Assembly: GCA_038087875.1 (NCBI GenBank)
Contig: CM075982.1
Span: forward strand, 72,044,001 to 72,108,000
DNA: 64,000 nucleotides
DNA from: Malacoraja senta
Lineage: Eukaryota
Reading direction: 5' to 3'
Positions 40,866 through 59,910 of the stretch are shown piece by piece. The number at the start of each line of letters is the position of its first letter. Position 1 is the first letter of the stretch. The position numbers were made by a program, and so were the translations under genes. Under the pieces are notes generated by a model. That model worked only from the letters and a program-made list of their open reading frames with translations, did no database searches and had not been told where the DNA came from.

Positions 40866-41065
40866 NNNNNNNNNNNNNNNNNNNNNNNNNNNNNNNNNNN
40901 NNNNNNNNNNNNNNNNNNNNNNNNNNNNNNNNNNNNNNNNNNNNNNNNNNNNNNNNNNNNNNNNNNNNNNNNNNNNNNNNNNNNNNNNNNNNNNNNNNNN
41001 NNNNNNNNNNNNNNNNNNNNNNNNNNNNNNNNNNNNNNNNNNNNNNNNNNNNNNNNNNNNNNNNN
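40866..41065. other. Assembly gap (200 N)
   Basis: Run of N. Confidence 1.
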
Positions 41066-50890: not shown

Positions 50891-51170
50891 GGGCGGCATG
50901 GTGGCATAGCGGTACAGTTGCTGTCTTGCAGCGCCAGAGATCTGGGTTCGATCCTGACTATGGGTGCTGTCTGTATGCAATTTGTACGTTCTCCCCGTGA
51001 CCTGTGTGGATTTTCTCCAGTTTACTCACACACACCAAAGACGTACAGGTTTCAGTAAAGATTGTAAATTGTCCCTAGTATGTGGTATAGTGCTGGTGAT
51101 CGCCGGTTGGCGCGGACTCGGTGGGCCAAAGGGCCTGTTTCCGAGCAGTATCTCTAAACTAAACTAAACT
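50891..51170 (+). mobile_element. HE1-like V-SINE
   Basis: GGGCGGCATGGTGGCATAGCGG (A box), GGGTTCGATCC (B box), V-domain and (CTAAA)n tail. Confidence 0.85.
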
Positions 51171-51200
51171 AGTGCAAAGAAAGCCGGCGTTTGTTCGGTT

Positions 51201-51677
51201 CCTGTGGATTGGAGGGTAGCTAATGTTACCCCACTATTTAAGAAAGGCGGGAGAGAGAAAACAGGGAATTATAGACCAGTTAGCCTGACATCGGTGGTGG
51301 GGAAGATGCTAGAGTCAATCATAAAAGATGAAATAGCGGCAAGGGAGAGCCAGTGGATGTATTGTACCTGGACTTTCAGAAAGCATTTAATAAGGTCCCA
51401 CATAGGAGATTAGTGGGCAAAAGTAGAGCACATGATATTGGGGGTAGGATACTGACATGGATAGAAAGTTGGTTGGCAGACAGGAAACAAAGAGTAGGGA
51501 TTAATGGGTCCCTTTCAGAATGGAAGGCAGTGACTAGTGGGGTACCGCAAGGCTCGGTGCTGGGACCGCAGCTATTTACAATATACATCAATGATTTAGA
51601 TGGATTCAAAGTAACATTAGCAAATTTGCAGATGACACAAAGCTGGGTGGCAGTGTGAACTGTGAAGAGGATGCTAT
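51201..51677 (+). mobile_element. Older 5'-truncated CR1, left part (host of the full-length copy)
   Basis: Degenerate RT ([27 protein letters not shown]) with deletion and frameshifts, ending at GAGGATGCTAT. Confidence 0.9.
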
Positions 51678-54600
51678 GTTGAAAAGTAGAAGCCAAGCAC
51701 AGGCAGACTTTATTCAGAACTGCTGTAGATTTGGGAGCAACAGCAGCAGGAGATTAGCAAGAGATACGACTGATTGGCTCTAGCCCGAGTGGGAGGAGAG
51801 AAGTGAGTCAGAGGGGGGAAAAACAGTTGAAAAGTAGAAGCCAAGCACAGGCAGACTTTATTCAGAACTGCTGTAGATTTGGGAGCAACAGCAGCAGGAG
51901 ATTAGCAAGAGATACGACTGATTGGCTCTAGCCCGAGTGGGAGGAGAGAAGTGAGTCAGAGGGGGGAAAAACAGTTGAAAAGTAGAAGCCAAGCACAGGC
52001 AGACTTTATTCAGAACTGCTGTAGATTTGGGAGCAACAGCAGCAGGAGATTAGCAAGAGATACGACTGATTGGCTCTAGCCCGAGTGGGAGGAGAGAAGT
52101 GAGTCAGAGGGGGGAAAAACAGTTGAAAAGTAGAAGCCAAGCACAGGCAGACTTTATTCAGAACTGCTGTAGATTTGGGAGCAACAGCAGCAGGAGATTA
52201 GCAAGAGATACGACTGATTGGCTCTAGCCCGAGTGGGAGGAGAAAAGTGAGTCAGAGGGGGGAAAAACAGTTGAAAAGTAGAAGCCAAGCACAGGCAGAC
52301 TTTATTCAGAACTGCTGTAGATTTGGGAGCAACAGCAGCAGGAGATTAGCAAGAGATACGACTGATTGGCTCTAGCCCGAGTGGGAGGAGAGAAGTGAGT
52401 CAGAGGGGGGAAAAACAGTTGAAAAGTAGAAGCCAAGCACAGGCAGACTTTATTCAGAACTGCTGTAGATTTGGGAGCAACAGCAGCAGGAGATTAGCAA
52501 GAGATACGACTGATTGGCTCTAGCCCGAGTGGGAGGAGAAAAGTGAGTCAGAGGGGGGAAAAACAGTTGAAAAGTAGAAGCCAAGCACAGGCAGACTTTA
52601 TTCAGAACTGCTGTAGATTTGGGAGCAACAGCAGCAGGAGATTAGCAAGAGATACGACTGATTGGCTCTAGCCCGAGTGGGAGGAGAGAAGTGAGTCAGA
52701 GGGGGGAAAAACAGTTGAAAAGTAGAAGCCAAGCACAGGCAGACTTTATTCAGAACTGCTGTAGATTTGGGAGCAACAGCAGCAGGAGATTAGCAAGAGA
52801 TACGACTGATTGGCTCTAGCCCGAGTGGGAGGAGAGAAGTGAGTCAGAGGGGGGAAAAACAGTTGAAAAGTAGAAGCCAAGCACAGGCAGACTTTATTCA
52901 GAACTGCTGTAGATTTGGGAGCAACAGCAGCAGGAGATTAGCAAGAGATACGACTGATTGGCTCTAGCCCGAGTGGAGGAGAGAAGTGAGTCAGAGGGGG
53001 GAAAAACAGTTGAAAAGTAGAAGCCAAGCACACGCAGACTTTATTCAGAACTGCTGTAGATTTGGGAGCAACAGCAGCAGGAGATTAGCAAGAGATACGA
53101 CTGATTGGCTCTAGCCCGAGTGGGAGGAGAGAAGTGAGTCAGAGGGGGGAAAAACAGTTGAAAAGTAGAAGCCAAGCACAGGCAGACTTTATTCAGAACT
53201 GCTGTAGATTTGGGAGCAACAGCAGCAGGAGATTAGCAAGAGATACGACTGATTGGCTCTAGCCCGAGTGGGAGGAGAGAAGTGAGTCAGAGGGGGGAAA
53301 AACAGTTGAAAAGTAGAAGCCAAGCACAGGCAGACTTTATTCAGAACTGCTGTAGATTTGGGAGCAACAGCAGCAGGAGATTAGCAAGAGATACGACTGA
53401 TTGGCTCTAGCCCGAGTGGGAGGAGAGAAGTGAGTCAGAGGGGGGAAAAACAGTTGAAAAGTAGAAGCCAAGCACAGGCAGACTTTATTCAGAACTGCTG
53501 TAGATTTGGGAGCAACAGCAGCAGGAGATTAGCAAGAGATACGACTGATTGGCTCTAGCCCGAGTGGGAGGAGAGAAGTGAGTCAGAGGGGGGAAAAACA
53601 GTTGAAAAGTAGAAGCCAAGCACAGGCAGACTTTATTCAGAACTGCTGTAGATTTGGGAGCAACAGCAGCAGGAGATTAGCAAGAGATACGACTGATTGG
53701 CTCTAGCCCGAGTGGGAGGAGAGAAGTGAGTCAGAGGGGGGAAAAACAGTTGAAAAGTAGAAGCCAAGCACAGGCAGACTTTATTCAGAACTGCTGTAGA
53801 TTTGGGAGCAACAGCAGCAGGAGATTAGCAAGAGATACGACTGATTGGCTCTAGCCCGAGTGGGAGGAGAGAAGTGAGTCAGAGGGGGGAAAAACAGTTG
53901 AAAAGTAGAAGCCAAGCACAGGCAGACTTTATTCAGAACTGCTGTAGATTTGGGAGCAACAGCAGCAGGAGATTAGCAAGAGATACGACTGATTGGCTCT
54001 AGCCCGAGTGGGAGGAGAGAAGTGAGTCAGAGGGGGGAAAAACAGTTGAAAAGTAGAAGCCAAGCACAGGCAGACTTTATTCAGAACTGCTGTAGATTTG
54101 GGAGCAACAGCAGCAGGAGATTAGCAAGAGATACGACTAATTGGCTCTAGCCCGAGTGGGAGGAGAGAAGTGAGTCAGAGGGGGGAAAAACAGTTGAAAA
54201 GTAGAAGCCAAGCACAGGCAGACTTTATTCAGAACTGCTGTAGATTTGGGAGCAACAGCAGCAGGAGATTAGCAAGAGATACGACTGATTGGCTCTAGCC
54301 CGAGTGGGAGGAGAGAAGTGAGTCAGAGGGGGGAAAAACAGTTGAAAAGTAGAAGCCAAGCACAGGCAGACTTTATTCAGAACTGCTGTAGATTTGGGAG
54401 CAACAGCAGCAGGAGATTAGCAAGAGATACGACTGATTGGCTCTAGCCCGAGTGGGAGGAGAGAAGTGAGTCAGAGGGGGGAAAAACAGTTGAAAAGTAG
54501 AAGCCAAGCACAGGCAGACTTTATTCAGAACTGCTGTAGATTTGGGAGCAACAGCAGCAGGAGATTAGCAAGAGATACGACTGATTGGCTCTAGCCCGAG

Positions 54601-54783
54601 TGGGAGGAGAGAAGTGAGTCAGAGGGGGGAAAAACAGTTGAAAAGTAGAAGCCAAGCACAGGCAGACTTTATTCAGAACTGCTGTAGATTTGGGAGCAAC
54701 AGCAGCAGGAGATTAGCAAGAGATACGACTGATTGGCTCTAGCCCGAGTGGGAGGAGAGAAGTGAGTCAGTGCCGGGAAAACA
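51678..54783 (+). repeat. 21 tandem 148-bp monomers forming the CR1 5' UTR / putative promoter array
   Basis: Units start at 51678, 51826, 51974 ... 54637. Only about 5 variant positions in copies 1-20; copy 21 diverges at its 3' end. Confidence 0.97.
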
Positions 54784-54987
54784 GTTGAAAACTGTGGAAT
54801 TTTGTTTGTAAATTGGTAAATCAGGCAATTTATCCGTCAATTTAAGCAAGACGGCTCTTAGCGAGCGGCAGTGAGTGAGCGGCCTTGTGAGGGAAGTGCC
54901 CTGTGAGAAAAGTGTGAGTCTTTGGCTCGAGAGTCTTCGGAGAGGACACCACGCAATACGCTTGAGAGGTAGAGACAAAAGAAGGAG

Positions 54988-55914
54988 ATGTCAGGCAAGC
55001 TGATTCAGTGCGATGCTTGCAGTATGTGGGAGGTCAAGGACACCGCTGGTGCCTCTGGCTGCTACAAATGCGAGAAGTGCATCCAGGTAGAGCTCCTGAA
55101 GGGCCGTGTTGGGGAACTGGAGAAGCAAGTGGATGACCTCCGGTTCGTCCGAGAAACGGAGTCGTTCCTCGACAAGTCCTACAGTACGATTGTTACACCT
55201 AAGGTACTGGAAGAGAGAAGGTGGGAGACGGTGAGAAAGGGAGGGAAGCATGGAATGCCAACGTCCCCGGGTGTTGTACCTCTTGTGAACAGGTTCACCC
55301 GCTTAGAAGCTGTTGGGACAGAAGACGTGTTTACACTGAGTGGCGGACTGGCTTGCGATGCGAATAGGGCTGTTGAGCCAAAACCAAAAAGGCCTAAGGC
55401 AGGCAACGCCATTGTAGTGGGAGACTCCATTGTGAGAGGTACGGACAGGGGTTTCTGTGGCAACAGACGGGATGCGAGGATGGTGTGCTGCCTTCCTGGT
55501 GCCAGGATCCAGGATGTCACGGACAGAGTGCAGAAAATCCTCAAGGGCGAAGGTGAACATCCGGAAGTGGTAGTGCATGTCGGCACAAACGATGTCGGAA
55601 AGAAGGGGATGAATATTCTGCAGCGTGACTTTAGAGAGCTCGGAAAAATGCTGAAAAGCAGGACCTCCAGGGTTGTTATCTCCGGTTTGCTTCCAGTTCC
55701 TCGTGCTGGTGAGAGCAGGAACAGGGAGATACGGGACCTGAACGTGTGGCTCAGGAACTGGTGCATGGGGCAGGGATTTAGATTCTTAGATCACTGGGAT
55801 CTGTTTTGGGGTAAGGGGGAACTGTACAAAAGGGACGGATTGCATCTTAACAGGTGTGGGACCAGCATTCTGGCAGGCAGGTTTGCCACTGCTACACGGG
55901 TGGTTTTAAACTGA
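54988..55914 (+). CDS. CR1 ORF1p: zinc finger/leucine zipper plus SGNH (GDSL-like) esterase domain
   Basis: CDAC...CEKC zinc finger, heptad LKGRVGELEKQVDDL, SGNH blocks GDS, PGA, GTND and DGLH. 308 aa uninterrupted. Confidence 0.93.
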   Translation: MSGKLIQCDACSMWEVKDTAGASGCYKCEKCIQVELLKGRVGELEKQVDDLRFVRETESFLDKSYSTIVTPKVLEERRWETVRKGGKHGMPTSPGVVPLVNRFTRLEAVGTEDVFTLSGGLACDANRAVEPKPKRPKAGNAIVVGDSIVRGTDRGFCGNRRDARMVCCLPGARIQDVTDRVQKILKGEGEHPEVVVHVGTNDVGKKGMNILQRDFRELGKMLKSRTSRVVISGLLPVPRAGESRNREIRDLNVWLRNWCMGQGFRFLDHWDLFWGKGELYKRDGLHLNRCGTSILAGRFATATRVVLN

Positions 55915-58900
55915 ATAAGGGGGGTGGGGTGTCAAATGGGATAGTGGAGGATGGAGTTAAAGGGAAAGGGTTTCTTAAATGTGTGAGCGTAGAGACAGAG
56001 GAGTGTAAAATGAGGGTAGAAGCAATAGGTAGCAAGGTGAAAAGTAAAAGTGGAAGACAGACAAAACCAGGGCAAAAATCAAAAAGGGCCACTTTTCAAC
56101 ATAATTGTATAAGGGGTAAGAGTGTTGTAAAAACAAGCCTGAAGGCTTTATGTCTCAATGCAAGGAGCATTCGTAATAAGGTGGATGAGTTGAATGTGCA
56201 GATAGCTATTAATGACTATGATATAGTTGGGATCACGGAGACATGGCTCCAGGGTGACCAAGGCTGGGAGCTGAACATCCAGGGATATTCAATATTCAGG
56301 AGGGATAGAGAGAAAGGAAAAGGAGGTGGGGTAGCGTTGCTGGTTAGAGAGGAGATTAACGCAGTGGAAAGGAAGGACATTAGCTTGGAGGATGTGGAAT
56401 CGGTATGGGTAGAGCTGCGAAACACTAAGAGGCAGAAAACGCTGGTGGGTGTTGTGTACAGGCCACCTAGCAGTAGTAGTGAAGTTGGGGATGGCATCAA
56501 ACAGGAAATTAGAAATGCGTGCGACAAAGGCAAAACAGTTATAATGGGTGACTTCAATCTACATATAGATTGGGTGAATCAAATTGGCAGGGGTGCTGAG
56601 GAAGAGGATTTCTTGGAATGTCTGCGGGATAGTTATCTAAATCAACATGTAGAGGAACCAACGAGAGAGCAGGCTATTTTAGACTGGGTATTGAGTAATG
56701 AGGAAGGGTTAGTTAGCAGTCTTGTTGTACGTGCCCCCTTGGGCAAGAGTGACCATAATATGGTTGAGTTCTTCATTAGGATGGAGAGTGACATTGTTAA
56801 TTCAGAAACAATGGTTCTGAACTTAAAGAAAGGTAACTTTGAGGGTATGAGACATGAATTGGCCATGATTGACTGGCAATTAATTCTAAAAGGGTTGACG
56901 GTGGACATGCAATGGAAAACATTTAAAGACTGCATGGATGAACTACAAAAATTGTTCATCCCAGTTTGGCAAAAGAATAAATCAGGGAAGGTAGTGCATC
57001 CGTGGATAACAAGGGAAATCAGGGATGGTATCAAAGCGAAAGATGATGCGTACAAATTAGCCAGAAAAAGCAGCATACCAGAGGACTGGGAGAAATTCAG
57101 AGACCAGCAGAGGAGGACAAAGGGCTTAATTAGGAAAGGAAAAATAGATTATGAAAGAAAACTGGCAGGGAACATAAAAACTGACTGCAAAAGTTTTTAT
57201 AAATATGTAAAAAGAAAGAGATTAGTTAAAACAAATGTAGGTCCCTTGCAGTCAGAAACAGGTGAGTTGATCATGGGGAACAAGGATATGGCGGACCAAT
57301 TGAATAACTACTTTGGTTCCGTCTTCACTAAGGAAGACATAAATAATCTGCCGGAAATAGCAGGGGACCGCGGGTCAAAGGAGTTGGAGGAATTGAGTGA
57401 AATCCAGGTTAGTCGGGAAGAGGTTTTGGGTAAATTGAATGGATTAAAGGCCGATAAATCCCCAGGGCCAGATAGGCTGCATCCCAGAGTACTTAAGGAA
57501 GTAGCTCCAGAAATAGTGGATGCATTAGTAATAATCTTTCAAAATTCTTTAGATTCTGGAGTAGTTCCTGAGGATTGGCGGGTAGCAAACGTAACCCCAC
57601 TTTTTAAGAAGGGAGGGAGAGAGAAAACGGGGAATTACAGACCAGTTAGTCTAACATCGGTAGTGGGGAAACTGCTAGAGTCAGTTATTAAAGATGGGAT
57701 AGCAGCACATTTGGAAAGTGGTGAAATCATTGGACAAAGTCAGCATGGATTTACGAAAGGTAAATCATGTCTGACGAATCTTATAGAATTTTTCGAGGAT
57801 GTAACTAGTAGCGTGGATAGGGGAGAACCAGTGGATGTGGTGTATCTGGACTTCCAGAAGGCTTTCGACAAGGTCCCACATAAGAGATTAGTATACAAAC
57901 TTAAAGCACATGGCATTGGGGGTTCAGTATTGATGTGGATAGAGAACTGGCTGGCAAACAGGAAGCAAAGAGTAGGAGTAAACGGGTCCTTTTCACAATG
58001 GCAGGCAGTGACTAGTGGGGTACCGCAAGGCTCAGTGCTGGGACCCCAGCTATTTACAATATATATTAATGACCTGGATGAGGGAATTGAAGGCAATATC
58101 TCCAAGTTTGCGGATGACACTAAGCTGGGGGGCAGTGTTAGCTGTGAGGAGGATGCTAGGAGACTGCAAGGTGACTTGGATAGGCTGGGTGAGTGGGCAA
58201 ATGTTTGGCAGATGCAGTATAATGTGGATAAATGTGAGGTTATCCATTTTGGTGGCAAAAACAGGAAAGCAGACTATTTTCTAAATGGTGGCCGACTAGG
58301 AAAAGGGGAGATGCAGCGAGACCTGGGTGTCATGGTACACCAGTCATTGAAAGTAGGCATGCAGGTGCAGCAGGCAGTGAAGAAAGCGAATGGTATGTTA
58401 GCTTTCATAGCAAAAGGATTTGAGTATAGGAGCAGGGAGGTTCTACTGCAGTTGTACAGGGTCTTGGTGAGACCACACCTGGAGTATTGCGTACAGTTTT
58501 GGTCTCCAAATCTGAGGAAGGACATTATTGCCATAGAGGGAGTGCAGAGAAGGTTCACCAGACTGATTCCTGGGATGTCAGGACTGTCTTATGAAGAAAG
58601 ACTGGATAGACTTGGTTTATACTCTCTAGAATTTAGGAGATTGAGAGGGGATCTTATAGAAACTTACAAAATTCTTAAGGGGTTGGACAGGCTAGATGCA
58701 GGAAGATTGCTCCCGATGTTGGGGAAGTCCAGGACAAGGGGTCACAGCTTAAGGATAAGGGGGAAATCCTTTAAAACCGAGATGAGAAGAACTTTTTTCA
58801 CACAGAAAGTGGTGAATCTCTGGAACTCTCTGCCACAGAGGGTAGTCGAGGCCAGTTCATTGGCTATATTTAAGAGGGAGCTAGATGTGGCCCTTGTGGC

Positions 58901-58946
58901 TAAAGGGATCAGAGGGTATGGAGAGAAGGCAGGTACGGGATACTGA
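55854..58946 (+). CDS. CR1 ORF2p: APE-like endonuclease plus reverse transcriptase (frame open from 55851; first AUG at 56010; possible -1 frameshift entry at 55911)
   Basis: EN motifs NARS, GITETWL, YRPP, MGDFN, SDH. RT motifs [35 protein letters not shown]1 C-terminal TRGH. No stops. Confidence 0.96.
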   Translation: MWDQHSGRQVCHCYTGGFKLNKGGGVSNGIVEDGVKGKGFLKCVSVETEECKMRVEAIGSKVKSKSGRQTKPGQKSKRATFQHNCIRGKSVVKTSLKALCLNARSIRNKVDELNVQIAINDYDIVGITETWLQGDQGWELNIQGYSIFRRDREKGKGGGVALLVREEINAVERKDISLEDVESVWVELRNTKRQKTLVGVVYRPPSSSSEVGDGIKQEIRNACDKGKTVIMGDFNLHIDWVNQIGRGAEEEDFLECLRDSYLNQHVEEPTREQAILDWVLSNEEGLVSSLVVRAPLGKSDHNMVEFFIRMESDIVNSETMVLNLKKGNFEGMRHELAMIDWQLILKGLTVDMQWKTFKDCMDELQKLFIPVWQKNKSGKVVHPWITREIRDGIKAKDDAYKLARKSSIPEDWEKFRDQQRRTKGLIRKGKIDYERKLAGNIKTDCKSFYKYVKRKRLVKTNVGPLQSETGELIMGNKDMADQLNNYFGSVFTKEDINNLPEIAGDRGSKELEELSEIQVSREEVLGKLNGLKADKSPGPDRLHPRVLKEVAPEIVDALVIIFQNSLDSGVVPEDWRVANVTPLFKKGGREKTGNYRPVSLTSVVGKLLESVIKDGIAAHLESGEIIGQSQHGFTKGKSCLTNLIEFFEDVTSSVDRGEPVDVVYLDFQKAFDKVPHKRLVYKLKAHGIGGSVLMWIENWLANRKQRVGVNGSFSQWQAVTSGVPQGSVLGPQLFTIYINDLDEGIEGNISKFADDTKLGGSVSCEEDARRLQGDLDRLGEWANVWQMQYNVDKCEVIHFGGKNRKADYFLNGGRLGKGEMQRDLGVMVHQSLKVGMQVQQAVKKANGMLAFIAKGFEYRSREVLLQLYRVLVRPHLEYCVQFWSPNLRKDIIAIEGVQRRFTRLIPGMSGLSYEERLDRLGLYSLEFRRLRGDLIETYKILKGLDRLDAGRLLPMLGKSRTRGHSLRIRGKSFKTEMRRTFFTQKVVNLWNSLPQRVVEASSLAIFKRELDVALVAKGIRGYGEKAGTGY

Positions 58947-59036
58947 GTTGGATGATCAGCCATGATCATATTGAATGGCGGTGCAGGCTCGAAGGGCCGA
59001 ATAGCCTACTCCTGCACCTAATTTCTATGTTTCTAT

Positions 59037-59910
59037 AAGAATGCAGGGTGACTTGGACAGGTTGGGTGAGTGGGCGGATGCATGGCAGATGCAGTTTAAT
59101 GTGGATAAATGTGAGGTTATCCATTTTGGTAGCAAAAACAGGAAGGCAAATTATTATCTGAATGGTGTCAAGTTGGGAAAAGGGGAAGTACAACGGGATC
59201 TGGAGGTCCTTGTTCATCAGTCAATGAAAGTAAGCATGCAGGTACAGCAGGCAGTGAAGAAAGTGAATGGCATGTTGGTCTTCATAACAACAGGAGTTGA
59301 GCATAGGAGCAAAAAGGTCCTTCTGCAATTGTACAGGATCCTAGTGTGACCACACCTGGCGTATTGTGTGCAGTTTTGGTCTCCAAGTTTGAGGAAGGAC
59401 ATTCTTGCTATTGTGGGAGTGCAGCGTAGGTTCACGAGGTTAATTCCCGGGATGGCGGGACTGTCACATGTGGATAGAATGGAGCAGCTGGGCTTGTATA
59501 CTCTGGAATTTAGAAGGAGGAGAGGGGATCTTATTGAAACATATAAGATTATTAAGGGTTTGGACATGCTAGAGACAGGAAACATGTTCCCGATGTTGGG
59601 GGAGTCCAGAACCAGGGGCCACAGTTTAAGAATAAGGGGTAGGCCACTTAGAACGAAGATGGGGAAAAACTTTTTCACCCAGAGAGTTGTGAGTCTGTGG
59701 AATTCTCTGCCTCAGAAGGCAGTGGAGGCCAATTCTCTGGATGCTTTCAAGAGATAGTTAGATAGGGCTCTTAAAGATAACGGAGTCAAGGGATATGGGG
59801 AGAAGGCGGGAACGGGGTACTGAATGTGGATGATCAGCCATGATCACAGTGAATGGCGGTGCTGGCTCGAAGGGCCGAATGGCCTACTCCTGCACCTGTT
59901 GTCTGTTGTT
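59037..59910 (+). mobile_element. Older CR1, right part
   Basis: Resumes at AAGAATGCAGGGTGAC, collinear with the left part. In-frame stop; CR1 3' hairpin and tail. Confidence 0.9.

What the first reader, a model, noticed from the sequence alone, without database searches (positions are those of the whole stretch)
51678..54987. CR1 LINE with a 3.1-kb 5' array of 21 promoter-like 148-bp monomers, beginning exactly at a monomer boundary
Seen: there are 21 nearly identical monomers. Each has an inverted CCAAT/NF-Y box (CTGATTGGCT) ~50 bp and an AP-1 site (TGAGTCA) ~20 bp upstream of the next monomer start, which lies in an initiator-like CAGTT. The element's 5' end (51678, GTTGAAAAG) is at that same phase. 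The whole 3.3-kb leader contains no AUG before ORF1. Established: tandem 5' promoter monomers are a hallmark of rodent L1 and are not a textbook CR1 feature. Inference: each monomer may act as an upstream promoter firing at the next boundary. Each retrotransposition would then lose at least one monomer, offset by array expansion, giving a self-renewing sacrificial promoter that arose convergently in CR1.
Basis: partly seen in the sequence, partly recalled or inferred. Interest (0 to 1): 0.82.

Follow-up and report, generated by a model that had tools for sequence, protein, structure and literature searches.

The report
Skate CR1 retrotransposon with 21-monomer leader
A young, intact CR1 jumping gene in a skate genome carries 21 near-identical 148-bp copies of its own 5'-end segment, which holds an NF-Y-type CCAAT box; this resembles mouse L1 promoter monomers, but promoter activity is untested and shorter 5' repeats in CR1-group elements are already published.

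Summary
At 51678-54783 there are 21 head-to-tail units (19 of 148 bp, 2 of 147 bp), and 15 are identical. Each carries CTGATTGGCT and TGAGTCA. There is no ATG before ORF1.

The array is the 5' end of a 7.36-kb CR1 with intact ORFs, cleanly nested in an older CR1.

The monomer is not a foreign satellite. A 96%-identical copy in Leucoraja erinacea has one homologous partial unit joined to the same leader.

The inverted CCAAT box is also the conserved core of an unrelated skate CR1 5' module. A promoter role is therefore plausible, though inferred.

Several claims weaken:
- "No AUG in 3.3 kb" rests on about 350 unique nt. The monomer alone gives P=0.13.
- The "exact boundary" start is one observation with roughly 6-9% chance probability.
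- Two other copies begin inside the unit, at positions ~39-47.
- The monomer is CpG-poor, while the leader is CpG-rich.
- Two RNA-seq runs show almost no monomer reads.
- The monomer-loss-and-renewal idea is already discussed for mouse L1.
- A 2026 CR1 survey reports 5' repeating subunits, 1-5 per array, in ORF1-less elements.

Verdict: a real new member of a known kind, unusual in having 21 copies and an ORF1. A genome-wide census and TSS mapping could not be done here. The scan holds no other note of this monomer.

The parts
51678..54783 (+). Array of 21 tandem monomers (148 bp; m9 and m21 are 147 bp). Each has an inverted CCAAT/NF-Y-type box CTGATTGGCT at position 93 and TGAGTCA at position 127. 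The + strand is 67% purine, CpG o/e is 0.26, and there is no ATG.
54784..54987 (+). Unique leader ('tether') that opens with GTTGAAAAC, an 8-nt repeat of the monomer start. It is CpG-rich (9 CpG, o/e 0.90), has no ATG, and is shared at about 95% identity with copy L001.
54988..55914 (+). ORF1, 308 aa: a Cys-rich N-terminus followed by a GDSL/SGNH esterase domain. It is intact.
55854..58946 (+). ORF2 open frame, 1030 aa: apurinic-type endonuclease plus reverse transcriptase. It is intact and overlaps the end of ORF1.
58947..59036 (+). 3' UTR ending in two octamers, ATTTCTAT and GTTTCTAT (59021-59036), with no poly-A. The last four bases, CTAT, repeat the CTAT at 51674-51677; this is either a 4-bp target duplication or priming microhomology.
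51198..51677 (+). Left half of the older CR1 copy (RT region, about 81-85% identical to the new element) that the young element interrupts.
59037..59897 (+). Right half of the same older CR1 copy. It continues exactly where the left half stops, with no target bases lost.

Best explanation
This is a recently inserted, apparently coding-competent canonical CR1 LINE in a skate genome. It spans 51678-59036 (7,359 bp). Its 5' UTR consists of 21 tandem copies of the family's own 5'-terminal 148-nt segment, then a 204-nt CpG-rich unique leader, then ORF1. That much is shown by the sequence and by related copies.

The rest is inferred. The amplified segment carries a strong NF-Y-type inverted CCAAT box and an AP-1-like site, and is part of the element's internal promoter region. 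Reiterating it multiplies the promoter module, and a copy truncated at its 5' end still keeps at least one module. This parallels the monomers plus tether of mouse L1.

The array probably grew by repeated unit duplication. One route is DNA slippage or unequal exchange. Another is reverse-transcriptase template switching at the 8-nt GTTGAAAA that is shared by the RNA 5' terminus and the unit boundary.
For: The array and motifs are real. Both ORFs are intact and have the expected domains. The tail is an octamer repeat of CR1 type. The insertion is bracketed exactly by the two halves of an older CR1, so the whole array lies inside the inserted unit and forms its 5' terminus.

The monomers differ from their consensus at about 0.2% of positions, so the array is young or homogenised.

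L001, a 96%-identical copy in Leucoraja erinacea, has one partial unit (positions ~47-125, including the CCAAT box) joined to the same CAGTTGAAAAC boundary and leader. The monomer is therefore native 5' UTR sequence and not a captured satellite.

CTGATTGG is present twice, 31 nt apart, as the best-conserved block of an unrelated CR1 5' module (ORF1 only 49% identical) in three diverged copies, L003, L004 and L006. Those leaders also carry their own tandem duplications of 80, 92, 16 and 51 nt.

The monomer plus leader together lack ATG (P=0.004), as expected for a scanned 5' UTR.

Monomer words occur at high summed depth in contigs of two differently labelled organisms, so the unit is multi-copy.
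Against: There is no functional evidence. RNA-seq depth on the monomers is 0-1.7. All leader reads carry G at 54947, the variant found in L001, so they come from copies other than this one. The tissues are unknown and the libraries are unstranded.

The monomer is CpG-poor (o/e 0.26) while the leader is CpG-rich (0.90), so the leader may be the real promoter.

Only three copies of the family could be examined. One has a single partial unit and one is truncated inside ORF1. Summed word depth of monomer relative to leader is about 0.3-1.6, a poor measure, but it suggests most copies carry few or no full monomers. Twenty-one units may therefore be a local expansion.

ATG absence in the monomer alone is not significant (P=0.13). 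The AP-1-like site is missing from L001's unit.
Confidence: 0.6

Rival explanations
1. The array is a locus-specific, post-insertion minisatellite expansion. A CR1 landed here with one or a few 5' units, and these then amplified in place by replication slippage or unequal exchange. The array has no role in the element's life cycle.
For: Fifteen of 21 units are identical, and m4 and m6 share one substitution at a two-unit spacing, a typical trace of DNA-level duplication. The only other full-length relative seen has one partial unit. Summed monomer word depth is low relative to the leader in organism D. No monomer RNA was seen. Other skate CR1 leaders show small, idiosyncratic tandem duplications, so the region may simply be duplication-prone.
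Against: Summed monomer word depth is far above that expected for one locus in two organisms. This suggests many monomer copies elsewhere, though the measure is crude. The array length is a whole number of units plus 8 nt, and the array begins at the element's 5' terminus. This fits transmission through RNA but does not exclude local growth.
Confidence: 0.27
2. Each monomer is an upstream promoter that fires at the next boundary (CAGTT). Every retrotransposition therefore loses at least one unit, and array expansion compensates.
For: The 5' end of this copy lies at the boundary phase within 0-4 nt. The CCAAT box sits about 55 nt upstream of the boundary and TGAGTCA about 21 nt upstream. These distances are reasonable for a pol II core promoter, from general knowledge.
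Against: This rests on a single 5' end with about 6-9% chance probability. Two other copies begin at unit positions ~39-47. CAGTT is only a partial initiator match. No start-site data exist, and the RNA-seq runs show next to nothing on the monomers. In single-unit copies such as L001, a start at the boundary would yield promoter-less progeny, so the ancestral start must lie upstream of the CCAAT box.
Confidence: 0.15
3. The copy number of 21 is an assembly artefact, caused by mis-collapse or over-expansion of a short array.
For: Near-identical 148-bp units are hard to assemble. The window contains a 200-N scaffold gap elsewhere, at 40866-41065. No spanning long reads could be examined.
Against: The array has scattered private variants in a fixed order and clean unique junctions on both sides. 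An array of 3.1 kb is well within long-read length.
Confidence: 0.08
4. The array is an independent satellite picked up by 5' transduction or read-through from a parent locus.
For: None directly. The monomer is multi-copy, and its genomic linkage could not be surveyed.
Against: L001 carries a homologous unit continuous with the same leader. The last unit, m21, grades into the leader through the shared GTTGAAAA.
Confidence: 0.04

Closest known systems
Mouse/rat L1 (L1Md) monomeric 5' UTR: tandem promoter monomers plus a tether (PMC6454616, PMC5381506, PMC9022269)
   Same: Both have tandem units of about 150-200 bp at the extreme 5' end of an autonomous LINE, followed by a unique ~200-bp leader before ORF1. 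In both, the units carry transcription-factor motifs. The idea that unit duplication offsets 5' truncation is stated for L1Md (PMC6454616).
   Different: This element belongs to a different LINE clade: CR1, with an esterase ORF1 and no poly-A. The units share no sequence with L1 monomers and are CpG-poor, whereas L1 monomers contain CpG islands. The motif is an NF-Y-type box instead of the YY1 site described for L1. Promoter activity and start sites are demonstrated for L1Md and untested here.
Repeating 5' subunits in CR1-group elements (PMC13343379, GBE 2026, Fig. 4 legend)
   Same: Both are CR1-group LINEs with species-specific repeating subunits of 100-500 bp near the 5' UTR. That survey included Leucoraja erinacea.
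   Different: The survey reports these only for some ORF1-less elements, with 1-5 subunits per array and no functional reading. This element has an ORF1 and 21 subunits.
Chicken CR1 5' UTR
   Same: Both belong to the same clade, and their 5' UTRs differ between subfamilies.
   Different: From my own recollection of the chicken CR1 literature, which I did not check here, no tandem monomer array is described for chicken CR1.

Membership tests
CR1-clade LINE (canonical CR1) | ORF2 with an apurinic-type endonuclease and a reverse transcriptase | tested here: met
   Pfam Exo_endo_phos 1e-12 and RVT_1 4.5e-33
CR1-clade LINE (canonical CR1) | Esterase-type (SGNH/GDSL) ORF1 | tested here: met
   Lipase_GDSL_2 3.8e-12. 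PMC13343379 states that esterase ORF1 is the only ORF1 type in CR1/L2 and that chondrichthyan L2s lack ORF1.
CR1-clade LINE (canonical CR1) | 3' end made of short octamer-type repeats, with no poly-A tail | tested here: met
   ATTTCTAT GTTTCTAT at 59021-59036. Thousands of RNA and DNA reads end at 59035/59036.
CR1-clade LINE (canonical CR1) | RT groups with CR1 reference elements in a phylogeny | tested here: inconclusive
   The best ORF2 hits are unnamed RT proteins of turtles, Xenopus and a lizard at 44-65% identity. No labelled reference set was available for a tree.
L1Md-type monomeric promoter | Tandem monomers at the extreme 5' end, followed by a unique tether | tested here: met
L1Md-type monomeric promoter | Monomer number varies among copies of the family | tested here: inconclusive
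   Only three copies were seen: 21 units, one partial unit (L001), and one truncated in ORF1 (L002).
L1Md-type monomeric promoter | CpG-rich monomers | tested here: not met
   Monomer CpG o/e is 0.26; the leader is 0.90.
L1Md-type monomeric promoter | Monomers have promoter activity and contain the transcription start sites | not testable with these tools
   The only RNA data were unstranded oligo-dT RNA-seq, with 0-1.7x depth on the monomers.
L1Md-type monomeric promoter | Element belongs to the L1 clade | tested here: not met
   The ORF1 is an esterase and there is no poly-A tail. It may work like an L1Md promoter but is not a member.
CR1-group 5' repeating subunit (PMC13343379) | Subunit of 100-500 bp near the 5' UTR | tested here: met
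   148 bp
CR1-group 5' repeating subunit (PMC13343379) | 1-5 subunits per array, in ORF1-less elements | tested here: not met
   21 subunits, and ORF1 is present

The most novel reading that the evidence does not exclude
The 148-bp units are working NF-Y/AP-1-dependent promoter modules that pass through the RNA intermediate. They are regenerated one unit at a time when the reverse transcriptase, on reaching the RNA 5' end (GTTGAAAA), re-primes on the identical 8-mer one unit downstream. This would make it a self-extending monomeric promoter that arose in CR1 independently of rodent L1. NF-Y boxes would then be a shared core of skate CR1 promoters.
Probability: 0.25. Interest if true: 0.65.

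Novelty: new member of a known kind. Interest (0 to 1): 0.42.

Why it matters
CR1 is the dominant LINE of most non-mammalian vertebrates, yet how it is transcribed is poorly understood. This full-length, intact copy has a cleanly defined 5' end and a reiterated 5' module. Its CCAAT box recurs in an unrelated skate CR1 leader. Together these give concrete, testable candidates for a CR1 promoter. If the monomers prove active, monomeric LINE promoters would have arisen independently in two LINE clades. That would suggest tandem reiteration is a general answer to 5' truncation. If they prove inactive, this is simply a large minisatellite in a LINE leader.

Tried and rejected
1. Other copies by protein look-up. 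The exact ORF1 is not on record. Near relatives gave only L001 and L002. No near-identical ORF2 exists in the protein database. Four look-ups for shark and ray homologues returned no record or no DNA.

2. Small ORFs that span the monomer junction (42 and 44 aa). They found nothing in the protein database or the contig index.

3. A monomer probe against metagenome contigs gave 0 hits.

4. Read laying was meant to give 5'-junction phases and start sites. Only contigs or unstranded RNA-seq were available. Most loose ends were not listed. Depth is a summed word depth and not a copy number. RNA coverage rises steeply towards the 3' end on both strands, which fits truncated copies carried inside other transcripts. 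It is therefore not informative about autonomous transcription.

5. Rfam found no family in 51000-59200. A two-monomer RNA folds no better than shuffles, z=-0.7. A structured-RNA role is rejected.

6. Upstream homology of L001 beyond unit position ~47 is no better than shuffles.

7. Earlier scan notes by sequence or words turned up no other instance of this monomer.

8. Captured satellite or 5' transduction is rejected, because L001 has a homologous unit continuous with the leader.

Full report
**1. What is there**

Tandem Repeats Finder reports a single array at 51678-54791 with period 148, 21.1 copies and 99% matches. Splitting at GTTGAAAA gives 21 units: 19 of 148 bp and 2 of 147 bp. Fifteen are identical. 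m4 and m6 share G123A. m9, m10 and m17 each carry one private change. The last unit, m21, differs in its final ~14 nt. A 30-nt probe from the unit matches 21 times, all inside the array, against 0 expected.

Every unit has CTGATTGGCT at position 93 and TGAGTCA at position 127, and CAGTT spans each junction. The stretch 51678-54987 contains no ATG.

After the 21st unit the sequence repeats only GTTGAAAA. It then continues as a unique 204-nt leader up to the ORF1 start at 54988.

**2. The element**

ORF1 (54988-55914, 308 aa) has a GDSL/SGNH esterase domain. The ORF2 frame (55854-58946, 1030 aa) has an endonuclease and a reverse transcriptase. Both are open. The 3' end consists of two octamers, ATTTCTAT and GTTTCTAT, with no poly-A.

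The element interrupts an older CR1. The old copy's reverse-transcriptase sequence stops at 51677 and resumes at 59037 with no bases lost. CTAT is present at both junctions. That is either a 4-bp target duplication or microhomology used for priming, and it leaves the 5' end uncertain by at most 4 nt.

The whole array therefore lies within a 7,359-bp retrotransposed unit and forms its 5' terminus.

The window also holds more than a dozen 5'-truncated CR1 tails.

ORF1's closest relatives are two Leucoraja erinacea proteins at 95% and 93% identity. An earlier follow-up note in this scan also calls this a skate genome.

**3. Where the monomer comes from**

L001 is a copy in the little skate assembly that is 96% identical over 4.4 kb. 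It carries a single partial unit (monomer positions ~47-125) joined to the same CAGTTGAAAAC boundary and leader. Upstream of position ~47, its similarity to the monomer is no better than shuffled sequence. Its unit keeps the CCAAT box but lacks the TGAGTCA region because of a 13-nt gap.

L002 is truncated inside ORF1.

The 148-bp unit is therefore native 5' UTR sequence of this CR1 lineage that has been amplified. It is not a satellite acquired from elsewhere.

**4. Is the unit promoter-like?**

The 10-nt CTGATTGGCT is a full match to the extended NF-Y box; I mark this as my own knowledge of the consensus.

Independent support comes from a second, unrelated skate CR1 5' module, whose ORF1 is only 49% identical. 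In three diverged copies (L003, L004, L006) the best-conserved block of the leader is a pair of CTGATTGG boxes 31 nt apart. The surrounding sequence has diverged and carries its own tandem duplications of 80, 92, 16 and 51 nt.

Two things follow. Recurrent inverted CCAAT boxes on the sense strand look like a shared feature of skate CR1 leaders. Tandem duplication in these leaders is also common.

This makes a promoter role plausible, but it remains an inference.

**5.

- *ATG absence.* The ATG-free 3.3 kb is really 148+204 unique nt. Dinucleotide shuffles give P(no ATG)=0.13 for the monomer, 0.034 for the leader and 0.004 for both together.
- *Boundary start.* The array is 21 units plus 8 nt, so the start at a boundary is one observation with roughly 6-9% chance probability. 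L001 begins at unit position ~47. A contig of another run joins an ORF2 position to unit position ~39 (table 5c). These 5' ends are not at the boundary.
- *CpG content.* The monomer is CpG-poor (o/e 0.26), whereas the leader is CpG-rich (0.90). Mouse L1 monomers carry CpG islands (PMC5381506). The leader may be the main promoter.
- *RNA.* Two oligo-dT RNA-seq runs, unstranded and with about 5% of each read, give depth 0-1.7 on the monomers, 4-8 on the leader, ~25 on ORF1 and ~6,000 at the 3' end, equal on both strands. This gradient is what truncated copies embedded in other transcripts would produce. All leader reads carry G at 54947, as L001 does, so they do not come from this copy. The tissues are unknown, so this is absence of evidence only.
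- *Copy number elsewhere.* Summed contig word depth of monomer relative to leader is about 0.3 in one organism label and about 1.6 in another. The measure is crude. It suggests the unit is multi-copy but that most leader-bearing copies carry few units.

**6. Mechanism**

Shown: this is a young, intact CR1 whose 5' end is a 21-fold reiteration of its own 5'-terminal segment.

Inferred: the segment is part of an internal promoter (NF-Y box, possibly AP-1). Its reiteration raises promoter dosage and buffers against 5' truncation, as proposed for L1Md (PMC6454616).

The same 8-mer, GTTGAAAA, sits at the RNA's 5' terminus and at the unit-leader boundary. This fits growth by reverse-transcriptase template switching at the RNA 5' end. 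It also fits microhomology-mediated DNA slippage. The shared m4/m6 variant points to at least one two-unit duplication.

The main rival is a purely local, functionless minisatellite expansion after insertion. The tools here could not exclude it, because no genome-wide census was possible.

**7. Comparison and novelty**

Tandem 5' monomers plus a tether define rodent L1 promoters (PMC6454616, PMC5381506).

A 2026 survey of CR1-group elements in 101 vertebrates, including the little skate, notes that some ORF1-less elements have 1-5 repeating subunits of 100-500 bp near the 5' UTR (PMC13343379). The general phenomenon in CR1-group LINEs is therefore already on record, though only descriptively.

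This case differs in having an ORF1 and 21 units, and in the identifiable NF-Y-type motif. I file it as a new member of a known kind. It is a useful substrate for the first functional test of a CR1 promoter.

No other note of this monomer exists in the scan.

**8. What could not be done**

- A census of the monomer across the genome.
- Long-read confirmation of the copy number.
- Start-site mapping.
- A labelled RT phylogeny.

Noticed in passing
L006:4509-7127 compared with window 55985-57639: This contig has an ORF1 only 49% identical to the window's ORF1. Immediately after it comes an ORF2 that is 96% identical in DNA to the window's ORF2. The same ORF2 lineage is therefore attached to two unrelated 5' UTR+ORF1 modules, which points to recombination or module swapping between CR1 lineages.
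   Followed up: partly
L005:2676-3605: A ~930-bp insert sits inside a CR1 ORF1 that is 90% identical to the window's. The insert has six 60-bp tandem units, each with a GC box (GGGGCGGG) and a forward CCAAT box. These are followed by a ~500-nt purine-rich tract and a CR1-type tail (TTTTCTATGTTTCTGT). It looks like a non-autonomous retroposon mobilised by CR1, with its own 5' promoter-like monomers.
   Followed up: partly
window 51674-51677 and 59033-59036: CTAT at the target matches the last four bases of the element's octamer tail. This is consistent with priming by microhomology between the nicked target and the CR1 3' repeat.
   Followed up: partly
window 55854-55914: ORF2's open frame overlaps the end of ORF1. 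GGUUUUAAAC sits directly before the ORF1 stop codon. Other scan notes propose a -1 frameshift here. It was not examined.
   Followed up: no
window 54947 and about 245 other sites in 54341-59040: Most reads and contigs of organism D, and copy L001, carry a different base from the window. In organism A the window's base is often the majority. The array-bearing copy therefore belongs to a sublineage that is minor in one skate label and commoner in another.
   Followed up: partly
window 26960 and 44005: CTGATTGG also occurs in the conserved 3' UTR of older CR1 copies (GGGGTACTGATTGGGGATGATCAGCCATGATCAC). This raises the background frequency of the motif in the window.
   Followed up: yes
window 40866-41065: A run of 200 N, an assembly gap. 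It was left untouched.
   Followed up: no
RNA runs X37/X38 at window 58459 and 58536>58415: Hundreds of reads carry the loose end GTATCAACGCAGAGTACAT, which I recognise from memory as a template-switch oligo, at 58459. There is also a 'goes back 122' joint at 58536>58415. These look like library artefacts or a variant copy with a local duplication in the CR1 3' region.
   Followed up: no
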